A stretch of 63,578 nt of DNA, filler included, from Intoshia linei (lineage: Eukaryota > Animalia > Orthonectida), in the NCBI GenBank assembly GCA_001642005.1. It is 5 parts of 5 records of this genome, joined end to end, with 100 filler letters (N's around TTAATTAATTAA, not from the genome) between each part and the next. Parts side by side here need not be neighbours in the genome. Positions count along the whole stretch, not along the records: positions 1 to 30,374 come from LWCA01000360.1; 4 more parts are not named here. One strand, 5' to 3'. Under the pieces are notes generated by a model that was given only the letters and a program-made list of their open reading frames with translations, did not search any database and was not told the DNA's origin. Position 1 is the stretch's first letter. Every line of letters starts with the position of its first letter. This document shows, one piece after another, positions 977 through 15,100 of this stretch. A program made the position numbers and the translations under genes.

Positions 977-1739
977 ATGGGTAAAATGCTTACAATCATA
1001 AAAGACATCCACGTGCAAGATGAACTTTCTAATAAAAAAACATCAAAAGTGGATACCCTAATATTGATATTATTTAAAAATAATTTATATTTGCACATTT
1101 TAAACGTTTTTATAGCTAAAACAAGAATATACCGATAATTTATCTGCGTCTTTATCGCAATATTCTCAAAATAAAGAATCTATACATGAAGATAATCAAG
1201 ATTCGATTAGAGATGACATTACAGAAATTCTTCAAGTTCAAAAAGATAATTCTCTGACAAATGATATTGTAGAACAAAAAGCGGAAGAACCAAAAAAATT
1301 GTTTTGATTTATTGTACCATCTCACGTCAATTTTAATATAATTTACATTTCAAATTTTTTCGAAAATTGAAATTTATTTTACGGTTAGTAACAAGAATCT
1401 AAATCACCTATCAACAGTTATTATAGATTCTTATTATTAATTTAAAGGTATCAACTAATTTTTGGTTTGTAAGAAAAATAAGTTAAATGACCTTTTCAAC
1501 AATCAATGACAGAATGCCATTAAAACGCCTGAAACGTTTTAGTGAATAATTTATTTTTATTTTGATCATATTTTTTACTATTTAGGGTTTCTTTAAAATT
1601 TTCTACTCCCAATCAGTATATATTTTACCATTATTTTAGTAAATACTATTACTACTGTATCATTCCGTTATTCATAGTCATAGTTTACACTGCTGTTTAT
1701 TGGCTACATCGTACATACGACAAAGACGATTTTGAATAA
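977..1739 (+). CDS. Possible small spliced gene or pseudogene with a C-terminal hydrophobic segment; structure unresolved
   Basis: Exon-like stretches MGKMLTIIKDIHVQDEL.., LKQEYTDNLSASLSQY.. and KYYYYCIIPLFIVIVYTAVYWLHRTYDKDDFE* flanked by GT/AG. I could not join them into one consistent frame. Confidence 0.3.
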
Positions 1740-2281
1740 TGGAACAGATTCCATTATATTAACATTCATTGTACATTATTACATTGTATTACATTAGCTA
1801 AAAAATGAAGCATATTTTTTGTTATTTTTGTAAATATATATTCACTTTAAATACATGTACTGTAGGACAAATGTATATGAACGTTGACACTAAATAAAAT
1901 ATAAATGAAAGTTAAATATGACAAATGATATAATTTTGAGTGATAGATTTCAGATTTTACATATTGTATATTGTAGTAGATTCAACTGTAATGTTGAATT
2001 TTTTGAAAAAACGGAAAAACATTAGTTTTAATAATTAAGAATTTCAAAGATAATCGATATTTTTTTATATCTTTTTAATACACAATTTAAATGTATATAA
2101 AATAAAATGAAAAATAAAAATAAGCATAATATTTGTATAAGTTGGATTGTATGTTTTAGATAGTGTCATTTAGAAAATCAATAAATTTAAATTATATAAA
2201 AATTTTTGTTAATAAAAATTTATTGATAAATTTTAAACATGTATTGTATTTTCATTTATTGAAATTTAATATTTAAAAATG

Positions 2282-5200
2282 ATGAATTTTGCTAAAAATT
2301 TCTTAAATGTGTACATTGGAATTCTTGTTTCGTTGTTTTGTTCATTTTCTATCTCTGTTCGATTTACCAAAGTTATGTCGATTGGATCATATAGCCCTAA
2401 AAAGGTAATGATTATAATAAGCATGATGTATACTCAAAAGTAAAATTTATGTATATTGTACAATGTACAAATAATAAGACTTATGAGTACAATAGTTTAT
2501 GTTTAAAATGTTTTACAATTTATATTATTATTATTATTAGGAAGATGAATTCAGGTGTGTGTCTCTTGATGTAGCACATTCTAATGCTAATTATATTAGT
2601 AAATTTACCTATGCTTATTATACATCTTAGGGTGGTCCAAAACTAAGTAAATTAACGACATTGAAAATGTAGTTTTGAGTATGTTATGAAAAAGTACAGG
2701 GTAACATATTATGCCTTTCCTATTGTTATTCGGTTTAACCGATCAGTGACAGATTCATTTTACATTGTCTAAAATCACAGTTTTGAGTAAATCGTCTTTA
2801 TATATAATTACTAGGTTGACTGTTATGTACTGCGTACATTGTAACGTCATACAAACAGTACATATCTGCCATTTTTACATTTGGAAATTTTTAATTCTAC
2901 CAAAAAAATAGATTCAATAAGAAAATGTAACTGAATCAAACGAAGACATCAATTTATAAGATTTCCACCTATATCTCTTTAATGTATATGTGTAGACGTT
3001 CAATGCATATTTTTTTTTAAATTGTAGGATGAATATTGACATTTTTAATTTTACACCTAATAATTAAAACATTTGAAAAATATTGGGTGATAATATATTA
3101 AAAATTATTTTTCACTGGGAATGCGTAGATTTCTGGGGTTAAAATGTTATATTTATATTAACTGGAATAAGCTTTACCAGCATAATCTTTTTTTTCATTA
3201 TAGAACCGTTAATTATATGAAATTTTGTTTTACATATTGTTAATAAAATATTTCCAATTTCAAAAAAAAAATTATTACTACTGAGCTTTTTTGACCATGA
3301 AGGCGTCACTTTATCATATTGAAATTTTTTTTTATGTGTTCGCTGGATATATCTTTATCAGCTATTATGTTGTTTTTAATTCTAAGACTATTTTTATTTT
3401 TTAAAAAAAAGGACAATGTTGGTTTTGATCAGTAAAATTAACTTTTTGAGGTTGCCATTTATTATAATGCTTATGATTTTAAAAACTATCCCAGAATTTA
3501 TGTTTTATAAAATTTAGAACATGTTTAATTTTTACAAAAAGAGTAATTTAGGGTTTTTGGCAATGTTAATCATTTTAAAACGCGTCCCAGAATGTATGTT
3601 GTATTAAATTTGTTGGCTTATTTTATTTTTAAAGAAAAGGGCAAATTGGATTTTTGACTCTAAAGCACTGAAATTCGGAAACTGAAAAATCAATATAAAC
3701 TCGCTTTGGGAAAACTGTATTATAAAGTGGGTTTGTTTACATCCTACGACTGTTAATTTGTTTAATAATGATAACGAACAAACACAAACATCTAATTTTA
3801 TATAAGTAAAAAATAGTCACCAAATAAAAACTTAAATGCTTTTTTGAATATCTCATCCATACCGCGAAAGGGTCAATTTGCGAAATTGAAATTTTTTATT
3901 AATGTTAACTGGAAATAGCTATATTAGCTCTGATTTTTAAAAAAAATGTAGGAATATTTTCATTTATTGAAAAAAAGGGGTAATCTGGTTTTGTTAGTCA
4001 AGATACCAGTTTTTATGATATGATATGCTCATGATTTTAAAACTATGAAGGAATGTATGTTTTATAAAATTTTAGGACTTTTTTCATTTAAAAAAAAAGT
4101 AATTTGGGTTTGGCGTTCGAACTTTGGACAATGAAGGTGTAAGTTTCGAAGGTTGAATGCTCAATTTCAAAAAATTATTTCCATTAAATCTATAGAAAAT
4201 CAATACAAAAATTTAAACAAATTTCGTCTAGAGTCTAAACCCCCAAGAGTGGGTTGATACGGTGGGTTCTACACTGTTATCACTATTATTAATTTTTGCT
4301 TACATTTTATTTTATAAAAAAAACAAATAATTCTCAAAAGTGTTTTCCAGTTAATCAGAAAAAATTACAATCCCCTAAATTTACATTTTCTCTGTCAAAA
4401 CCTTTTTTAACATTTCTTTAACCTATATATTTATCTAATTTTTAAATAAAATTGTATAATTTACAATTATACAATTCAAAATAATAATTTAAAATGAAAT
4501 GACCACTTAACAATTTCATAATATGATTTATACACATTCTACAAAATTTTTCCAGCATACTCAAAGTTACTTTTTAAATATTTTTTCGGATCAGCCTAAT
4601 ATAAATGTAATTTATATTTTATTTTGATTTTTTAAGAGTCAATTCAAATGAATGTTTCAAAAGAAATCAAAAATTTAATATTATTTGGTTGCGAATACGT
4701 CGGATCAGATGAAAGTATTTGGTAACATCTTAACCACTTTAATTAGGTGGTGAACTATTTTGGGCTATTACACGGCATCCACTGAAAAAATTGCAAACAT
4801 TTTACATCCACAAATTTGGTAGAATGCCAAAAATGATATATAGACCAAGGGTTTATTAAAAAAATTTGAAGGTCGATTTTTAATATTTTTAAAATTATAT
4901 TTATACTCTTTTGAATGTATCATATTTAATGAATGCAAATATGAACTATAACTTTTTAGGGTATATCATTATTTTTTCAATTGATAATGAGGTGCACAGG
5001 GAAAATTTTTTGTAAAATAAGTTTATTTAAAGCTGGACCCATCAAAAATAACAAAACTTTGTGTTGTATCCGTTCTTACTTCATGCCAACCCTTAATTAT
5101 ATTTGTTTATTATTATTATTATTATTATTATTGTAGGGAGTGTGACAGCAAAGTTAGTGGAGATTATCCTTGCAATCCAAATGGATGGATTCAAGTTATG

Positions 5201-7400
5201 TTTTATGGAAAAATGAATTTAAATAAACAATCTGATATTAATTTAGATAAAGGTATTAATTTATTGTTAACTTTCTAAGGCTTTTAAATTGGAGTAAGTG
5301 ATTGTGATTTCCCTGGGAAATATAAAGAAATATATGAAAGTATGAAAAATTAAATCTAGTAAGAGATTAACACCAGATTAATGTGATTGATAAATCTAAG
5401 TTATATATTAATAGTAATAATCGATGCTGAGAACTCATAATAAATAATCAAGTTGTATTATGAAGTTTTTGACTAGAAAAATTTTTGAGATTTTCCGATC
5501 AAAACCTATTTAAAAAAAATCGGCTTGCAGAATCCAAAAAAAATATTTATCTAAATAGTTTTGGTGTTATTGTCGAAATTATAAAAATTAAAATTCAGAA
5601 TAATTCCAAGCACTATCGATGTATATTTAAAAAAATTATCGGCAAAATCTAGTATAAGAAATAGTGGACTAATTTATTTGTTAAATAACGATTTAAACAA
5701 CTGATTTTCCTGATGATTTGTGTCACCTCGAGCGTACTTGGTTCCGCTTTGATTAACCCTATCATTAAATGATCAATTTATTTATTTCCTATGAAAATTA
5801 TGTGATTTTAAAACATTTTTAGATTTGGGTTACAAAATTGGAGGAAATAGTAGAATCAATTATTTGGTAATGCGTGTTCATTATAAATACACATCAGGTA
5901 CATTGAATACATTGTTATTGGATTTTTTATGAATGTAAAAATATAATTCCAGATAAACCAATGGCTCAACTGGCATTATCAATAACAAATGAACCGTATT
6001 ATTTATATCTCATTATAACGCATATGAGGAGTTCAACTTTCAACTTACAATATATGATGCATTTAATTTTTTTAATGCTTTTATCATAATTTTGAGATGA
6101 AATAAATGTATATTTTTATATTTTATTCAAAATAAAATTTTTTTTCAATAATAATAAAACGAAAACATTCCAAATTTGACAGAAACTGGATGATAACAGC
6201 ATGATGAAATTTGACCATTTTACTTGCAACTCTATATGAATTATTATAATATTAAATTAGTATATTTTTTTTGAATTTTACTTTAATTAGTCAGCATAAA
6301 AATGTTGGAATTTACATGATGGCAGGTTCAGGCGAATTTCCAGCGAGTCAAAATTGTATCATTTCATCAAACTAAAAAATTTTACTTTTTAGCAAACTTA
6401 AATATTAATTGTAATTACAAAGGAGAGGATACATGGCATCCATTCATGTACTTGATTAATCACAACGAAAAAGGTTTTATATTTTTAAATATAAAATAAA
6501 TGATTCCTATAGATTTACATTTACAAACAAAAATTAAAAAAAGACATTTTCCGTTTATTCTACTTGATAAAAGATTTAATGCGTCTGTAATTGAAGTAAG
6601 TTTACATTTATTTAAAAAATTAAACTATCTAAAACATTTACCTTTTCAGAAATTTTACGAAATAAAGGGATATAACGAGATGCCCATAGATCCAGGCGAT
6701 AAAATTGTAAAGATAAAGTAAATTAAAATAATTTTATTATAGAGTTCAGATATAAAGTTAAATAATGACAATAGCGTTGCTCTTCCAATAGGGTATATTT
6801 AAACTTGCTAATTTTTTTTGACAAGAAATTTACTTAATTAATTACATAATTATTAGTTTAAATTCAATGGAAGAATTTGCAATTGTGTATATAATGTACT
6901 ACGTTATTAGTAGCCGGTATCCGCTTGGAATGATTTGTTCTAAATACAATTTGTCGAGTATATATAAGGATTATAAAAAGAAGACATTTAATAACGATTT
7001 TGGAGTTATTAACATTGAAGACGATAGCGGTGTTATCAATGAACACGGAAAAGATAAAGAAAACGAACTTGAAGATGAATATCAATATGAATATAAAAAC
7101 ATGCAGGGTAATGAAAACTGGGATAAAAATTATTTTAAAACAAATAAAAATGTCAAATTGAATAAGTTTTTCAATAAAAATATAAAAAATAAACAAAATA
7201 CGCTAAGAATAAAAAAATATGAATTGAAAAAGATTATTGATAACTGGATGGATAAGAATAATAATGTGGCTGAACAAAGTACACGAAGTATTAATTCTGT
7301 AGATGAATTCAATCCAAATTATGCTGCTTGGATTTATAAACAATCGTTTAATAATGGGGATCAATATATCCCTGCTGCAAATTTATTTGGAGATATTTAA
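2282..7400 (+). CDS. Secreted peptidylglycine alpha-hydroxylating monooxygenase (PHM)-like protein, predicted catalytically inactive; 12 exons
   Basis: Exons 2282-2404, 2541-2598, 4637-4721, 5137-5252, 5823-5897, 5953-5995, 6291-6355, 6393-6473, 6513-6595, 6650-6706, 6743-6792 and 6857-7400 splice in frame with GT-AG. Product has a hydrophobic N-terminus and collinear PHM motifs: EDEFRCVS, LILFGC, IWECD, LGYKIGGNSRINYLVMRVHY, VGIYMM, NINCNY, FYEI..IDPGDKI, EEFAIVYIMYY. Confidence 0.85.
2811..2870 (-). mobile_element. Helitron-like 3' terminus (hairpin + CTAG) in PHM-like intron 2; element body with internal sub-repeats probably extends towards ~4200
   Basis: Same terminal motif as 19003-19048, 25655-25700, 34631-34680, 41312-41356 and 47380-47430. 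Adjoining sequence tttaattctaccaaaaaaata is shared with 8395-8420, 18955-18990 and 47435-47470. Confidence 0.6.
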
Positions 7401-9115
7401 TTATTTACATGCATAATTGTTAATAAATGCTTTAAAATTGTGTTATTTTTAAATTTAATAAAATTCGTTTATATTTATTACAATTTATATATTAGAAAAG
7501 ACACCAGAAAATAATTTTCTAATAGAATCTCAAAATTAACACACATCATTTTAGTTGGTTGACACCATTTTTTTAATACCATCATAGGGGTACACAGCTA
7601 AAAGGGTTGACAATATCTGGTCTACATGGAAAAATGCATAAAAAAAGAATTTAAAAAAAATATTTAAGAACAGTAAAAAATGTTCATAAAATAACAAATT
7701 AGTGATGATAAACAAATAATATGGATCAATATGCCTAAAATATCGGCATGAAATATTTATAATTTAAAAAGGTACGCGAGTTGCGTAACACGGTAAATAT
7801 TATGTTGGGAACCCCTGATCTATAAGTAAAGGTATATTACTTTACTTATATAAAATTGTGTGTTACCGTTTATTTAAAAAATTATCAGTCTTAAAATTAA
7901 AAAACCCAATTTCTAATACTGTTTACAGATTTTTATATGTGATGTTTATATCCAAGTTTCATTATCCGAATTTAAATTTTTCAAGGGCTTTCTAGGTCAA
8001 CAACCCAATTTCCCCGTTTGTTTAAAAATAAAATCAGCCTAAAAATTTAATAAAACAAATTTTAAGACGGGTTTTAAAATCGTTAAGATTTTCATATTTA
8101 TATCAGCCTCGGAAACGCTAAACTTCATGGTATAAACTACTTCAATTATCCTTTGTTTTAAAAATTAAATATATCCTAAATGTTATAAAACAGCTTTTGG
8201 TATAGTTTTTTAAAATAAAAGTAATATCATTAATCACACTGTCAAAAAGGTACATTTTCACGATGAAAACCTCAGAAATTTTTTAAAAAATTAAAAATAA
8301 TCCTAGAATTTAGAAAAAAATTTACAACTAAGTGAAGTTATCCCCAGATTTTAATCCCCTTATAATAGATAGATATAATAGATAGAATAATAATTTTTAT
8401 TCTACCAAAAAAATAAATTCACGTTGAAAAATCTAACTTAAAAATTCGACTATTAACTATTTTCAATCCTTTAAAGGAGTGGTTCTCAAACTTGTTTCAG
8501 GTGGAACCGTCATATCACATTACTTTTTACTTTAAAGTGAATTATTCTATTTTAATTTTGTTTTGTTATTAAATTTAAAATTAAAATAAACATAATAAAA
8601 TAGTCTCACAGATTTCCAGGCATATAGTTTTTGACCCCAATCGGGAACCACTAACATAGATAAAAAAGTGTCAAAGGAGCTAAAAGTAGTTGGAATAGAT
8701 AGATCAAAAATAGGTATTCTGTAATCTCAAAAAGGTTCAGACGGGTCGTTACTTTTTGAAAGCGAGTCTCATAGCTAGTGATTTGAAAGTCAATTGCAGT
8801 TGATCAACGTGATATATAGAATGATGAAATATAATAAAAGTTGACGGTTATGCAGTCAATAACGTAACACGATGAATGGTTAAATTCTAAATAAATGTAT
8901 ATCATTGTATCACTAATTGCTAAGAAATTAAGTTGAAACATTACCAATCTCTATCGTAAGTATTTTATAATTACTATGTGGATAGAATTTGCGGATTTGT
9001 TTATAGTGTAATAGTGAAAATGTGTTTGTAAGTCAATGAGTAAAAGAGTACACAATGAATTTGAATTCGTATCTGAATTTGAAATTTGCAATTTGAAAAT
9101 AAATATAACTAGAAA

Positions 9116-12100
9116 ATGTTGGGAAACATTACAGACACATTAAAAAGAATAGTCTGTGATTATATTTTGAAAGAAATTTGTGGTAAATTCATAAAAACAA
9201 ACATATCTAGCGATGAATTAAAAGTAAAAAGATTGGAAGGATCAGCTCAAATAACAAATATTGAATTGGATACAAATTATATAAATAGTTTAATCAGACA
9301 AAAGACTACAAATTTATTTATAAAATATGGCAAGATTGAATATATTGATGTAATAATACCTTGGAGAAATCTAAGCAGTTCGCCAACAAAAATTCGAATA
9401 AAGGGAGTACTATTGGAATGTGGAATAAAGGCTCAAAACGATATAAACTCATTACTCCTCTCCCTTTCAACAGCAATGTGTGGTGTAGGCCAATTTTTTG
9501 AAGAAGAACTTGTGAACCCAAAATTAAGTTTCGATGCAACAAAGATTGGAGGTTTAAAAATGTTTACAAGTGTATTGCAGTCTATAATCTACGGAGCAAT
9601 AATTGAATTTGAAAATGTTTCCATTTCTTTAAATTTTTTTGTAGAAAATTGTAACAATTTTTTGATTTTAGAAACGGAAAAAATTCAAATCATCAATGAG
9701 AAGGTGGATAATAACAATCAGAATGAAGGTAAAAATTTATACAAGCAAATTCTTTTTTACGGCTTGAAAATATTCTTCAATAGCATCAAGGATGATTGCG
9801 AAAATATGGTTGAATATGATGTAGACAAGTCTACTTCTTTTGAAGAAGAATCTGAAAATGTTGAAATGGATGTGGGTATATTAATTTTTTATATCCCGTC
9901 TAATAAGTGTTTTAAAATTCTTATGGAAAGCGATGAAAAATTTAATTATTTAATGATGGATGTTTATATTGATACGGCATCCGTTATTCTCTTTCCATAC
10001 GTTTTGTCAATATTTAACACGTTTGCATCTAGTTTAAGTTCTAGTGATGTGCATGGTTTTTCCCTTTACAGTGCAAGCGATACTGGAACGGAATGTGATA
10101 CGAAATGGAAGAATCCAGTGACAGATAAAGCTAATAAAATTGAAGAAAAGTTTGATTGTTCCATTAAATTTTGCGTAAACCAATTTTCACTTATAATTGC
10201 CGAAAATGACATGGAATTGGATTCTATCGAAAACGAAGAATTACTAAATTGTCATGAAACTGCAATAAGAAATTTTTTAAATTTTCGAGAGAAGGAAAAT
10301 TTGAACGAGATTGAGAAAAAAGTTTTTTCTTACGGAAGTTTTCTACAGATGGCATTAACGAGTGTCCAGTTTCAAATAATTTATTCTCATGATTCAATTT
10401 CAATGAATCTTTCCCTCAAAAATTTCGAAATTTACGAATTTGTCCAAACCGACAATAAAATTGTTATCAATGAAATTATCAAACCAAACAAGGATAGCGA
10501 TTTTGATACAAACGTTATCTTATTTCATATTGTTTGTCATAATAAAATCAATGATTCTTCGATATACGGCAAAAAGTGTGATTTTTCTTTAAAATTTTTG
10601 CAACAGATGAATGTCACTTTTGATTACAATATTATTACAAGATTGTCTCGACTTTTGAACATTTTTTCAAATTCAGACATTGAAATTAAAAATAATACTA
10701 AAAATCAAGATTCTTTTTTTATTCAAATTGATTTTGTGAAAATTTATATAAACTTGGCTATACCGTCTTTAAAAACTGAAACGGATTTTCTCGATTTATA
10801 TATTGATGAATTGACCATAATTTATTTGAATAACCCGTCATGTCGCAACAATTGTTTTGATTTAATTTTCACAAATTTACATTGCGATTATGTATTTAAA
10901 GAAAAAAAATTAAATTTTTTCAACATTAGTTGTTTGAATGGCAAGAATAAAATCAAAATTGTTACCAAAAACGAAAAAAATTTAAAAAATTTCGACTACA
11001 TGAAATATCCAAACTATCCCTTCAATATAAATTCCAGAAATTGCAATGGAAACGTAATTACAGTTCCCACGTCGTTTGATGAAATTTGTTGTTATCAGAA
11101 GGATATTCTTTACTCTACTAGTCTATTTTTTAAAATTTCTTTATCAAAAATTAGTATTTTTTTATATCAAAAGGATTTTCTCGATCACTTATACCTTAAA
11201 TTTGCTTTTGATGTACTCGATTGGTTCGACACTTTGGAAAATGGTACGCAAAATATAAATGTTGAAAATTCTCTAATCACCGCGAATGTTGCATTTAATT
11301 TTAAATCGAGTACTCTCGTTGTTTGGCACATTATATCAAACGATGCTGAAAATTGTATAGTCGTTTGGAAAGGTAAAAAATTTGGTTTATTTTACAATGA
11401 CTTGTATGCAAACTCTTTAAATCAAGTCATTGCTTCAAATTTAACAATTACGATAGATTCCTTTGCTGTTTATTATTCCCTTATCCCGGAAATTATTCAA
11501 AATATTGACCAAACGAGCAATGTACTCGAAAAAAAACTATCAAACTTGGAAAATTTAGAAAATTTTCTAATTTCCTGCAAGGACTCTAATATTGATGCAA
11601 TTTCGTCTTTTTCTGAACAATCTGATTCAGAATTAAATCTCAATTGGAAAATTATTATTGAAGATGTTGGAAATATACCTCGAAAATACTCTCACAATCA
11701 CGTACAATTGGAAGATTCTGCAACTATTTTTAAAAATATTAATCTTAGAAAATTTAAAAAAAAACATCCAATGTTTATTTTTGCATTTAAACTCATTTAC
11801 CAGGATAAACCTTCTTTTTCAGATATAACTTTAGCTACAAATGTTTATAATTCACTCATCACTAGCCATGAATCAATGTCAATTTATAAATTTATTCAAA
11901 TGCTCATTACTTTTTTTGATACGAGTGATATAAATACTTCCCTTTATACGGTACCAGATAGCGTTACAAAGTGTAATTTTACCTTTAATAATATACGAAT
12001 GCATTTATCGTATCCAAATTTGAAAATAAAAATTTTTCTAGTATCAAATTTTGCTAGTATTTCGACTAATGTTACATTGGAAGATAATTCTTTTGTTTTA

Positions 12101-15100
12101 AAATTCATTTTTGAAGACTTGGCAATGCACATGTCGTTAATTGAAAAAAATGATTCAAATATTCTTAAAGTTGCTTCAGTAGGACATTTAAGTATTTCTA
12201 TTCATTTTAATTATATCGATGGAACCAATTATAAACTTCAAATATACTTATCAAACGATTTATTATCAATTTGTTGTTGTTTGGACACTATTGGCCTTTT
12301 ACGTCAACTGATTTGCCACGTTTTTGAAATTAAAGTCGAAACTGAACCCAAATCTAATGATAAAGAAAAACATGATACGCAATTACCTAAGTGTGAAAAT
12401 GAAACCAAGACCAACATAATTTTCGATTCAAATGAGGAATACAATTCTGATTCATCTTCTGAACAAAGTTCCAAGGATGAATATGATAATGTAGATTCTA
12501 CATATGAAATACCTACTCGCGATGATTTAAAAAATGCTCAATTACAATCTATGGAAGAATTAATTAAATGTTTTGTGTCACCCGATATCACATTCATTGA
12601 AAATTTTATGGAAACTTCTTTAAATTCTTATTCACTCAACGAATATTCTCCTTCAAAAAATGCAGATTTATCCATAAATTTATCTTCCTTTTCTCTAGTT
12701 TTAACTTTGTTTGATGGGAATGACTTTCCGGTGTCAAATAGAAATAACAATCTTTCAGTTGGTCTCAAAGTTATGGGAATTAAATTACTTTACGAAAAGT
12801 ATGATCCTGTTCCAGCGTCAGTCTTGAATTTGGTCAAATTATCTATCGATGACATTCAAATTATAGACAATAATCCTTCTTCTTCAGTTTCCATAATACT
12901 TTCCAAGTGTCCAGTTAGAAATCAATCCAAAATTTCAAATTGCCAAATTTTTACAATGAAGTATCAATTACATTATAAACCGTATGATGATATTGTTAAT
13001 GAAGCTATTTTTACGTTTTCTATTTTTCCTCTCAAAATTAATATTGATCAGGATACTTTGACCTTTTTGTGCAATTTTTTTTCTAATGAAAATTTAATTA
13101 AAAATAATATTAAGTGTAACGGGAGAGTTGTTATTGATGATGTTTTGATTAATGAAATTGATCCGACTTTTAGTACGTATTTTAGGTTTGTTGAATTTTT
13201 ACCATCTATTGTGCTGCATATTAATTTTCATGGTAGACCTCTTTCTAGTAAAAGAAACAGTTTTTCAGATATCTTGTTGGGGTTTGCACAGTTGGCTTCT
13301 TCTAAAATTGTTCTCAAGAATCTGCAATGCAACGGGTATTTTTATAGTCTGTTTAGGTTATGTCAGGTATGTTAGGTATGTAAGTTATGGCATTATTTTT
13401 AAAAATTTATCCATTTAACAAAATCTTACTTATCAAATCCAATTTATCAACTTATACGAGAAAAACACCAATTAAGCAAAACTGTAAGGAAAAAATACAC
13501 TTTTTCAAATTTTTTTTGAAAAATCCAATTTTACCAAATTATAAGAGAAAAAAAACCAAAACTTTACGGAAATAACACACTTTTGTTAATTTTTATTAAA
13601 AAAATCCATGTTTATTTTTATTTTTTATATAAATACGATTTTACAGAATTATTGGAAAAAAACTCCAAATAACCAAAACCTTAGGGAAATAATACAATTT
13701 TCCAAATTTTTTTAAAAAAAAAACCACGTATATCTTTATTTTTTTGATAAATCCAATTTTACAGAATTATTGGAAAAAATACACTTTTATTAATTTTTAT
13801 TTGAAAAAAATCTAATTTTACCACACTTTACGACCAAAAAATAAAATTTAAATGTATTAATTTAGACTTTGTGGATGGAACGAAGTTATTACGTTCATCT
13901 TAAAGAGTTGGATGGATGATATTTTCAACAATCAATTATCCAGTGTCATTTCTAGTATTGAACCAATTAATCATGTTGCAGTTTTGTGTACTTTTTTATA
14001 TTCATTTTAACAAAACTTTCCAGGAAAGATTGACAAGCAATAATTAGTTTAGTAAATAATTTAGACTGAAATAGTGGTGTCAACTTTAAATATTTTATCT
14101 AACGTGCAAAAATTGACCAATTCATAACAACAATGATATTTTAATTTTTGATATACAGTATTCTCTCCATAACTCGCCAATTCTATTACTTAATAATACG
14201 ATTAATAATCCATATATCTACTTTATTTAACATTTCTATTGACCTTCAAATATTCGAACTTTAGGCGTATTTAAAAATAATCTTGAGGTGATTCAGAAAA
14301 AGTGATTATACCATCTTGTTTACTTTTAAATTTTACTCTTGCATTCAAAAAAAGTTTTCATTTTGTTGGACTGTGTTATTAGTGTGAAATAGTTTGGTCT
14401 TTAATTTTATGGTTAGTTCAAATTTACACTCTGCTCTCATAAAAAAGGAAGATTTTGTCTATCTTTTTAAAGATTGACAAGCTGGATTAAGTATTAAGAC
14501 TGACAGCTTTATAAATATTTGTCAAATGAAATATAATGGTGAAAATGTGTTAATATAAATCTTTTTATAAATTTTCAATCTTTTTCAACATAAATATCGA
14601 CAATCTGGCGGCTTATTTAAACCCAATAATTAAATGTAAAGTTTAAGTAAATTAATATTTTTATTTAAAAATCACATTATCTACCAATACCTCGATAAAT
14701 CTTATAAAGATAAACGTATGAATAAACGGTTTACGTTAATAATCGCGATTAATATAAACACTCTTTAAAACCCTCATAATATTTTGGCTAAAAAATACCT
14801 TCATAACCATCACCTTGTTTTGGTTCAGAATATAAATCTTTAAAACAGACTATTTTTCATAATATTACCACATTTTAATTATTACCGAAGTGCAATTTTT
14901 ATTTACTTACGTTATTTGTTAATTTATTTAATTATTGTTAAAATTTAATTTTTACTTGGCACGATAACATTTTATACATTATTAGATAAAGGATTGAAAG
15001 ATTTGATTGGAATACCAATTGAACAATATAAAACTGATGGAAGGGTGCTACGTGGTATTAGACAGGGTTCTGACGCATTTATATTATCATTGTTTGTTGC

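What the first reader, a model, noticed from the sequence alone, without database searches (positions are those of the whole stretch)
2282..7400. Intact secreted PHM-fold pseudoenzyme stripped of copper ligands but keeping disulfide pairs
Seen: 12 exons splice into one uninterrupted frame. Aligned by eye to rat PHM numbering: CuH ligands H107/H108 become K/N (EIKNLILFGC vs TVHHMLLFGC), H172 is kept (MRVHY), CuM ligands H242/H244 become N/N (FMYLINHNEK vs FAYRVHTHHL) and M314 becomes F (SMEEFAIVYIMYY vs SSDEMCNLYIMYY). Substrate/catalytic residues also change: Y79 to F, Q170 to R, R240 to L, N316 to I. Cys pairs equivalent to 81-126, 114-131 and 227-334 are kept, while both partners of 293-315 are lost together. 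Established: these ligands are required for peptide amidation chemistry. Inference: the fold is under selection for a non-catalytic role, e.g. peptide-binding decoy or carrier, regulator of the real amidating enzyme, or secreted host-facing protein. The ORF track misses almost all of this gene.
Basis: partly seen in the sequence, partly recalled or inferred. Interest (0 to 1): 0.85.

Follow-up and report, generated by a model that had tools for sequence, protein, structure and literature searches.

The report
Copper-free PHM-like secreted protein gene
The orthonectid parasite Intoshia linei carries an expressed, correctly spliced 12-exon gene for a relative of the peptide-amidating enzyme PHM that has lost five of its six copper ligands while keeping three stabilising disulfide pairs, so it is almost certainly a catalytically dead offshoot of the enzyme; its new job is unknown.

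Summary
Twelve GT-AG exons (2279-7400, + strand) join into one open 460-codon frame. A 1410-nt spliced contig from an independent 2024 run follows every junction. The genome is Intoshia linei. Its database entry for this gene, hypothetical protein A3Q56_03324 (P0001), is mis-modelled and has no domain call.

Rat PHM is the only solved relative (E 1.8e-6). Those alignments confirm H107/H108 to K/N, H172 kept, H242/H244 to N/N, M314 to F, R240 to L and N316 to I. The mature protein has exactly six cysteines, which match three PHM disulfides.

The same genome keeps a bifunctional PAM (contig C3181) and a DBH-like gene (C1376), each with all six ligands. The loss is therefore specific to this gene. 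An open frame of this length has a chance probability of about 4e-17.

The best reading is a single-copy, selected, secreted PHM-fold pseudoenzyme. Loss of the carboxylate anchor argues against a trap for glycine-extended peptides. No orthologue was found, dN/dS could not be measured, and the function is unknown. It is a new variant of a known kind, of moderate interest.

The parts
2279..2404 (+). Exon 1. It holds the start codon (two Met) and a signal-peptide-like N-terminus. The only strongly hydrophobic stretch of the protein is residues 7-30, and a likely cleavage site follows the small residues S-I-S at about residue 26.
   Evidence: The transcript contig covers it from 2294.
2541..2598 (+). 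Exon 2. It carries F46 at the Y79 position (2550-2552) and C48, the equivalent of C81 (2556-2558).
   Evidence: Record positions 113-169 of the X1 contig.
2599..4636 (+). Intron 2 (2038 nt). It is filled with dispersed repeats.
   Evidence: Joint 2598>4637 GT..AG. Copies of 70-85% identity lie on C1376, C3181 and at window 7841-8321. Depth in X1 reaches about 4000.
4637..4721 (+). Exon 3. It carries the former CuH pair: K73 (4669-4671) and N74 (4672-4674) in place of H107 and H108. The LFGC motif with C80, the equivalent of C114, is kept.
5137..5252 (+). Exon 4. It carries C92 and C102, the equivalents of C126 and C131.
5467..5646 (+). Intronic dispersed repeat, wrongly annotated as an exon in the database protein P0001. 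It is not part of the mRNA.
   Evidence: More than 20 copies across the genome. It is skipped by the transcript joint 5252>5823.
5823..5897 (+). Exon 5. It carries the retained H148, the equivalent of H172 (5879-5881), and R146 at the Q170 position. It is the only exon that alone touches Pfam Cu2_monooxygen.
   Evidence: (E 0.0015, 19.1 bits).
5953..5995 (+). Exon 6, the linker and start of the C-terminal domain. It is missing from P0001.
6291..6355 (+). Exon 7, the first strands of the C-terminal domain. It is missing from P0001.
   Evidence: It is not detectable on its own against PDB.
6393..6473 (+). Exon 8. It carries C196, the equivalent of C227. The former CuM pair is N212 (6458-6460) and N214 (6464-6466) in place of H242 and H244. 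L210 (6452-6454) replaces R240.
6513..6595 (+). Exon 9. Intron 8 is only 39 nt.
   Evidence: joint 6471>6511, cut +2.
6650..6706 (+). Exon 10.
6743..6792 (+). Exon 11. The C293 position is occupied by a non-cysteine residue.
6857..7400 (+). Exon 12. F287 (6876-6878) replaces M314, A288 replaces C315 and I289 (6882-6884) replaces N316. Y291, the equivalent of Y318, and the YIMYY strand are kept, as is C307, the equivalent of C334. A tail of about 145 residues rich in N and K follows, with no relatives. The stop codon TAA is at 7398-7400.

Best explanation
This is a single-copy, transcribed gene of Intoshia linei. It encodes a soluble secretory-pathway protein of 460 residues. The protein has a signal peptide, a two-domain PHM-type fold held by three ancestral disulfides, and a low-complexity tail of about 145 residues.

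It descends from the peptidylglycine alpha-hydroxylating monooxygenase lineage but has lost both copper sites. One of three CuH ligands remains and none of three CuM ligands. Two of the three residues that dock a glycine-extended peptide are also gone. It therefore cannot carry out the copper- and oxygen-dependent hydroxylation, and it acts, if at all, by binding rather than by catalysis.

Shown: the gene structure, the transcript, homology to PHM, the substitutions, the cysteine pattern, the presence of intact PAM and DBH-like genes, and a non-random open frame.

Inferred: secretion; selection on the fold; and a non-catalytic binding role. The substitutions around the old CuM site (L, I, F, N, N) make that cleft more apolar. 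This fits a new hydrophobic ligand or a protein partner better than a peptide carboxylate.
For: - The 12-exon GT-AG model has an open frame of 460 codons.
- An independent spliced 1410-nt contig matches all junctions, with two letter differences in the coding sequence.
- The PHM-like parts occur only on C2558, with no retrocopy in the assembly. The spliced contig is therefore RNA-derived.
- P0001 against PDB hits only PAM/PHM chains, best E 1.8e-6, and the alignments show every substitution.
- Protein-language-model neighbours are PAM-family clusters (score 0.88, 181 shared features). The best structural neighbour of the Atlas model is a peptidylglycine monooxygenase cluster.
- There are exactly six cysteines outside the signal peptide, equal to three PHM pairs. 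Two other pairs were lost as pairs.
- The only hydrophobic segment is N-terminal.
- P(open frame by chance) is about 4e-17.
- PAM on C3181 has HH, H, HxH and M, followed by a PAL-like exon and an NHL hit. The DBH-like gene on C1376 has all ligands.
- About five intron positions and phases are shared with the resident PAM, plus one approximate.
- The scan of the gene span found no alternative exon with ligand motifs.
Against: - No orthologue was found, so purifying selection is inferred only from the open frame, intact splice sites and paired cysteines, not from dN/dS.
- Pfam scores are below the curated cut-offs (18.6 against 23, and 14-19 against 30 bits), although they were measured on single exons or on the mis-spliced P0001.
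- No usable structure model was obtained (pLDDT 31; Atlas pLDDT 0.36).
- The transcript comes from a single run of unrecorded library type.
- Orthonectid proteins evolve very fast (PMC6543705), so some divergence may be drift.
- The function is entirely untested.
Confidence: 0.7

Rival explanations
1. It is an expressed but functionless relic. A duplicated PHM gene was released from selection and is drifting towards pseudogene status, and the transcript is noise.
For: Five of six ligands and two of three substrate contacts are gone. No relatives of the tail exist in 1.84 billion representatives. No orthologue is available for a selection test. The lineage evolves quickly.
Against: Divergence from both rat PHM and the resident PAM is near saturation, at about 24-26% identity. 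Even so, 460 codons stay open in a 24-28% GC context (P about 4e-17). All 11 introns keep GT..AG and are spliced exactly. Cysteines are retained or lost strictly in pairs. The genome is compact at 41.6 Mb.
Confidence: 0.12
2. It is still a metalloenzyme or metal-binding protein that uses a migrated or different ligand set, for example H148, H205, H213 or M284, for new chemistry.
For: H172 is kept, a His sits between the two Asn at the old CuM strand, and several other His and Met residues lie nearby in sequence. Reviews note that catalytic residues can migrate in apparent pseudoenzymes (PMC10211241, abstract listed).
Against: On a beta-strand, the residue at position 243 points to the opposite face from positions 242 and 244. 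This follows from established geometry and was not modelled here. Neither site keeps more than one canonical ligand. No structural model is available to place the alternatives.
Confidence: 0.08
3. It is a decoy or buffer for glycine-extended peptides, or a direct regulator of the resident PAM. These are the reader's specific proposals.
For: The fold, the secretory routing and Y318 are kept. A catalytically competent PAM exists in the same genome to be regulated. Pseudoenzyme-enzyme pairs of this kind are common (PMC5106787 and PMC10211241, abstracts listed).
Against: R240, the salt bridge to the substrate carboxylate, and N316 are replaced by L and I. PHM is not known to work as an oligomer (own knowledge). 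No interaction test was run.
Confidence: 0.1

Closest known systems
Rat/human PHM catalytic core (PHMcc; PDB 1PHM, 1OPM, 8DSL and others)
   Same: It is the only solved family hit (E 1.8e-6). The order of the two domains is the same. The motifs LFGC, VHY and YIMYY are shared. Three of five disulfides, H172 and Y318 are kept.
   Different: H107, H108, H242, H244 and M314 are replaced by K, N, N, N and F. R240, N316, Q170 and Y79 are also changed. Two disulfides are lost. There is an extra N/K-rich tail of 145 residues. Identity is about 26% over the best 121 residues.
The resident bifunctional PAM of Intoshia linei (contig C3181)
   Same: About five intron positions and phases are shared, plus one approximate. 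Two of them use the very same split codons (TG|G for Trp, and G|AT for Asp). Domain order is the same.
   Different: PAM keeps all six ligands and is followed by PAL. Identity is only 24% (z 3.3 against shuffles). The copper-free gene keeps C81-C126, C227-C334, LFGC and YIMYY, which my model of the resident PAM lacks. It is therefore not a recent copy of that gene.
Stand-alone soluble PHM of insects (PMC6529398) and of nematodes and flatworms (own knowledge)
   Same: The architecture is the same: a signal peptide plus PHM only, with no PAL, no transmembrane segment and no cytosolic domain.
   Different: Those enzymes keep all copper ligands and are active. Orthology to them could not be tested because their sequences could not be fetched with these tools.
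Copper-protein derivatives that lost their ligands: arthropod hexamerins and pseudo-haemocyanins (own knowledge) and poxviral SOD-like pseudoenzymes (PMC7605207, abstract listed)
   Same: The fold of a copper protein is kept after loss of the metal ligands and re-used for a non-catalytic role such as storage, carrying or acting as a decoy.
   Different: These are unrelated folds and families. The comparison is an analogy of evolutionary route only.
DBH / MOXD1 / tyramine beta-hydroxylase branch (I. linei copy on C1376)
   Same: It belongs to the same superfamily of type II copper ascorbate-dependent monooxygenases.
   Different: No DBH chain was hit in PDB. The motifs are of PHM type. C1376 keeps all ligands.

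Membership tests
PHM/PAM monooxygenase (Pfam PF01082 + PF03712) | Profile score above Pfam's curated cut-offs for both domains | tested here: inconclusive
   P0001 scores 18.6 bits for PF03712 (cut-off 23) and 14 bits for PF01082 (cut-off 30). Exon 5 alone scores 19.1 bits. The genome scan finds only exon 5. P0001 lacks four true exons, and the joined model has no reference and was not scanned.
PHM/PAM monooxygenase | Significant sequence homology to a solved PHM | tested here: met
   phmmer against PDB gives E 1.8e-6 to 6e-5 for 13 PAM/PHM sequences, and no other family below E 0.1.
PHM/PAM monooxygenase | CuH site: H107, H108, H172 | tested here: not met
   The residues are K73, N74 and H148, so one of three is kept. 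They are confirmed in the transcript contig.
PHM/PAM monooxygenase | CuM site: H242, H244, M314 | tested here: not met
   The residues are N212, N214 and F287, so none of three is kept.
PHM/PAM monooxygenase | Peptidyl-glycine docking residues R240, N316, Y318 | tested here: not met
   The residues are L210, I289 and Y291, so one of three is kept.
PHM/PAM monooxygenase | Five conserved disulfides of PHMcc (numbering from the published structure, own knowledge) | tested here: inconclusive
   Three pairs are kept (81-126, 114-131, 227-334). Two pairs (47-186, 293-315) are lost with both partners. No unpaired Cys lies outside the signal peptide. The C131 equivalent needs an insertion of 5-6 residues in the alignment.
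PHM/PAM monooxygenase | Entry into the secretory pathway (signal peptide) | tested here: met
   Residues 7-30 are the only hydrophobic window (Kyte-Doolittle 19-residue mean of 1.96), with small residues before a likely cleavage site. No dedicated signal-peptide predictor was available.
PHM/PAM monooxygenase | Gene structure shared with a bona fide PAM | tested here: met
   Introns 3, 4, 8, 9 and 11, and approximately 7, share position and phase with the PAM gene on C3181.
Pseudoenzyme (operational definition: homologous fold, catalytic motif missing) | Lacks catalytic residues while an active paralogue exists | tested here: met
Pseudoenzyme | No catalytic activity and no copper bound | not testable with these tools
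   This needs the recombinant protein, metal analysis and a PHM assay.
MANF/CDNF C-terminal SAP-like domain (PF10208), considered for the tail | Profile or pairwise match to ARMET_C | tested here: not met
   Only a weak phmmer hit exists (E 0.03). The ARMET_C profile finds the true MANF on C1673 but not this tail. BLASTP against that MANF domain finds nothing. There is no Pfam hit.

The most novel reading that the evidence does not exclude
A copper-free PHM fold has been recruited in orthonectids as a secreted binding protein with a new ligand or partner. Examples would be a factor acting on the host during the plasmodium stage, or a non-catalytic helper in the secretory or ciliary pathway where PAM normally works. 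That would make it the first natural pseudoenzyme of the peptide-amidating monooxygenase family, and a natural experiment on what the PHM fold does without copper.
Probability: 0.2. Interest if true: 0.65.

Novelty: new variant of a known kind. Interest (0 to 1): 0.45.

Why it matters
PHM/PAM is the only known enzyme that makes amidated peptides (PMC3241674 abstract). Its six copper ligands are treated as invariant. In eight full-text searches I found no report of a natural member of this family without them.

A stable, disulfide-bonded, copper-free PHM fold that is still expressed would show that the scaffold can be re-used for a non-redox role. It would also give structural biologists a natural 'apo' form to compare with engineered copper-depleted PHM (PMC6123673, found).

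In practical terms, the public gene model is wrong. It has one false repeat-derived exon and four missing exons, and it carries no domain annotation. This locus would therefore be invisible to family surveys.

The weight of the finding is limited because it is so far a single gene in one very fast-evolving parasite. No orthologue is known and there are no functional data.

Tried and rejected
- The joined 12-exon protein has no reference, so it was not sent to any search, family or fold tool. I searched exon by exon and with the database protein P0001. The join was used only inside local scripts that read window.fa.
- Pfam on eight single exons hit only exon 5.
- PDB search with exon 7 found nothing. 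Exon 2 is too short for the tool.
- HMMER of the last exon against 1.84 billion representatives found only the gene's own entry and a repeat protein.
- Word-based homologue searches with P0001, whole and over region 1-260, found only itself. One call failed on the E-value limit.
- The look-up of encoding contigs had no record.
- Aligning PAM exon fragments to P0001 with MAFFT, to build a profile, gave a meaningless alignment and was dropped.
- Local tblastn of the model against C3181 and C1376 was too insensitive.
- AlphaFold2 of P0001 without an alignment gave a mean pLDDT of 31, which is unusable, so no fold search was run.
- The MANF-like tail was rejected.
- The scan for alternative exons carrying HH..C, HxH or EMC motifs in 2200-7450 found none.
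- Neither a phylogeny against other animals' PHMs nor dN/dS was possible, because no other PHM sequence could be fetched by reference.
Full report
**Where this is.** The window is contig C2558 of a 41.6-Mb assembly in 3520 contigs, with about 25% GC. The database protein that matches the locus is named 'hypothetical protein A3Q56_03324 [Intoshia linei]'. The organism is therefore an orthonectid, a group described as highly simplified, fast-evolving parasitic relatives of annelids (PMC6543705).

**Checking the observation.** I read 2000-7700 and translated the three forward frames. From these I built an exon model and adjusted it until every boundary was AG|..|GT and the frame stayed open.
- The exons are 2279-2404, 2541-2598, 4637-4721, 5137-5252, 5823-5897, 5953-5995, 6291-6355, 6393-6473, 6513-6595, 6650-6706, 6743-6792 and 6857-7400.
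- Together they give 460 codons and a TAA stop.
- Introns range from 36 nt to 2038 nt.

**Is it transcribed and spliced that way?** One public run holds the stretch. It is X1, from 2024, kept as contigs, with library type not on record. It has 21% of the sampled words, close to the 26% of the stretch that is exon.

Laid on 2200-7450, one contig of 1410 nt runs from 2294 to 7440. Its joints coincide with my introns 2 and 4-11, all GT..AG. Its record coordinates also fix introns 1 and 3.

The PHM-like parts of the gene occur nowhere else in the assembly. There is thus no retrocopy that could mimic a spliced form, and the contig is evidence of mRNA. It differs from the genome at two coding positions, a synonymous change at K226 and Q420K. 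The codons at all former ligand positions are therefore confirmed by independent data. This is one run from one study, so it is a single source.

**The public gene model is wrong.** P0001 (407 aa) has several errors:
- It starts inside exon 3.
- It inserts about 48 residues from 5467-5646.
- It skips exons 6 and 7.

The inserted piece is a dispersed repeat with more than 20 copies in the genome, and the transcript skips it. P0001 carries no precomputed Pfam domain.

**What the protein is related to.** The joined model has no reference, so it was not sent to any search or fold tool. I used single exons by reference, and P0001.
- Single exons are mostly too short. Only exon 5 touches Cu2_monooxygen (E 0.0015), and the whole-genome family scan likewise sees only that exon.
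- P0001 scores below the Pfam cut-offs: 18.6 bits against 23, and 14 bits against 30.
- Against all PDB sequences, however, its only credible hits are 13 PAM/PHM sequences, with best E 1.8e-6.
- Protein-language-model neighbours are PAM-family clusters. The best structural neighbour of the Atlas's own poor model is a peptidylglycine monooxygenase cluster.
- No DBH chain is hit.

Homology to PHM is therefore supported, at about 26% identity over the best 121 residues.

**Residues.** The HMMER alignments place the positions as follows:

| Rat PHM position | This protein |
|---|---|
| H107, H108 | K, N |
| Q170 | R |
| H172 | H (kept) |
| R240 | L |
| H242, H244 | N, N (a His sits at 243) |
| M314 | F |
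| C315 | A |
| N316 | I |
| Y318 | Y (kept) |

Assigning these positions as CuH ligands, CuM ligands and substrate contacts rests on the published PHMcc structures (established knowledge).

The model has seven cysteines. One lies in the signal-peptide core. The other six sit at the positions of C81, C114, C126, C131, C227 and C334. The C131 equivalent needs a short insertion in the alignment. Both partners of 293-315 are gone, and so are both partners of 47-186. No cysteine is left unpaired. That is the pattern expected of a protein that still has to fold in an oxidising compartment.

The only hydrophobic segment is at residues 7-30. The product should therefore be soluble and secreted or luminal, with no membrane anchor and no PAL domain. 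Residues 316-460 are 32% N plus K and have no relatives anywhere.

**More than chance?** Stop codons occur at 0.079 per codon in this gene's introns and at 0.11 in the two wrong frames of its exons. A 460-codon open frame has a probability of about 4e-17, and none of 20000 shuffles of the coding sequence stayed open. Alongside this, all 11 introns are exact and the sequence is diverged almost to saturation. This argues that the reading frame has been maintained by selection. It is not a substitute for dN/dS.

**The rest of the family in this genome.**
- Contig C3181 carries a gene whose PHM core I could join from eight GT-AG exons into an open 266-residue stretch. It has HH, H, HxH and the Met of DEMC.
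- That core is followed by an exon that weakly matches the start of rat PAL (E 0.066) and by an NHL hit further on. This is the canonical bifunctional PAM.
- Contig C1376 carries a DBH/MOXD-type gene with all six ligands.

Ligand loss is therefore specific to the gene in the window.

The copper-free gene shares about five intron positions and phases with the PAM gene, plus one approximate. Two of them split the very same codons. Yet it is only 24% identical to PAM (z 3.3). It also keeps cysteines and motifs (LFGC, YIMYY, C126, C334) that my model of the resident PAM lacks. It is thus an old paralogue, not a recent copy. Its architecture equals that of the stand-alone PHM of insects (PMC6529398) and of nematodes (own knowledge). 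Orthology could not be tested.

**How it most likely works.**
- With one of three CuH ligands and none of three CuM ligands, it cannot bind the two coppers that activate oxygen. This follows from established PHM chemistry.
- With R240 and N316 replaced by Leu and Ile, the canonical grip on a peptide's C-terminal carboxylate is also gone.
- The former CuM surroundings have become more apolar (L, I, F).
- My best reading, at about 0.7 for the core claim, is a secreted, disulfide-stabilised PHM-fold pseudoenzyme that acts by binding something new.
- What it binds is unknown. A regulator of PAM, a host-facing factor or a carrier all remain open, and none was tested.

**Rivals.**
- An expressed relic without function (about 0.12).
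- A metal protein with migrated ligands (about 0.08).
- The specific peptide-decoy or PAM-regulator roles (about 0.1).

**Things that led nowhere.** AlphaFold2 on P0001 alone gave pLDDT 31. A weak resemblance of the tail to the C-terminal domain of MANF (E 0.03) was not borne out by the ARMET_C profile or by comparison with the organism's own MANF. Fragment alignment and local tblastn were uninformative.

**Literature.** Eight full-text searches, one review and one orthonectid paper turned up no description of a PHM or PAM family member without copper ligands, and nothing on amidation in Intoshia. The library does not cover most subscription journals, so this is absence of evidence only.

**Verdict.** The locus is a new variant of a known kind, a pseudoenzyme branch of the PHM family. 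Interest is moderate, because it rests on one gene in one fast-evolving parasite, without an orthologue or functional data.

Noticed in passing
window 5467-5646 (inside intron 4): This is a dispersed repeat with more than 20 copies in the genome, at 44-72% protein-level identity. The public annotation turned it into a false coding exon of A3Q56_03324.
   Followed up: yes
window 2599-4636 (intron 2), also 7841-8321: The 2-kb intron is packed with repeat copies that recur in introns of the PAM gene (C3181) and of the DBH-like gene (C1376) at 70-85% identity. Related sequences reach very high depth in run X1 (up to about 4000), so the repeat family appears to be abundantly represented or transcribed.
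   Followed up: partly
window 9116-13375 (+): A single uninterrupted ORF of 1419 aa matches Pfam ATG2_CAD (autophagy-related protein 2; E 5.5e-18). It is the downstream neighbour and is unrelated to the finding.
   Followed up: partly
window about 7206-7330 (tail residues about 405-445): A 40-residue stretch resembles the C-terminal SAP-like domain of MANF/CDNF in PDB (E 0.03), but without the CxxC motif. The resemblance was not confirmed by the ARMET_C profile or by the organism's own MANF on C1673.
   Followed up: yes
G000:C3181 (L009) 1528-7258 and onward: In my exon model, the canonical bifunctional PAM of I. linei has no Cys at the positions of C126 and C334, and it has fewer introns than the copper-free paralogue (exons 5+6 and 10+11 are fused). 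The N-terminal exons were not located.
   Followed up: partly
G000:C1376 (L008/L010) about 8016-12508 (+): This is a DBH/MOXD1-type copper monooxygenase gene with all six ligands intact. It is the best Pfam hit in the genome for both copper monooxygenase domains.
   Followed up: partly
window introns 7, 8 and 10 (6356-6392, 6474-6512, 6707-6742): Very short introns of 36-39 nt are spliced accurately and sit next to a 2-kb intron in the same gene.
   Followed up: no
window 2248: One X1 contig matches from 2248 onward but carries 255 unrelated letters before it. There is no AG acceptor at that point. It could be a repeat boundary or an alternative 5' end, and it was not resolved.
   Followed up: no
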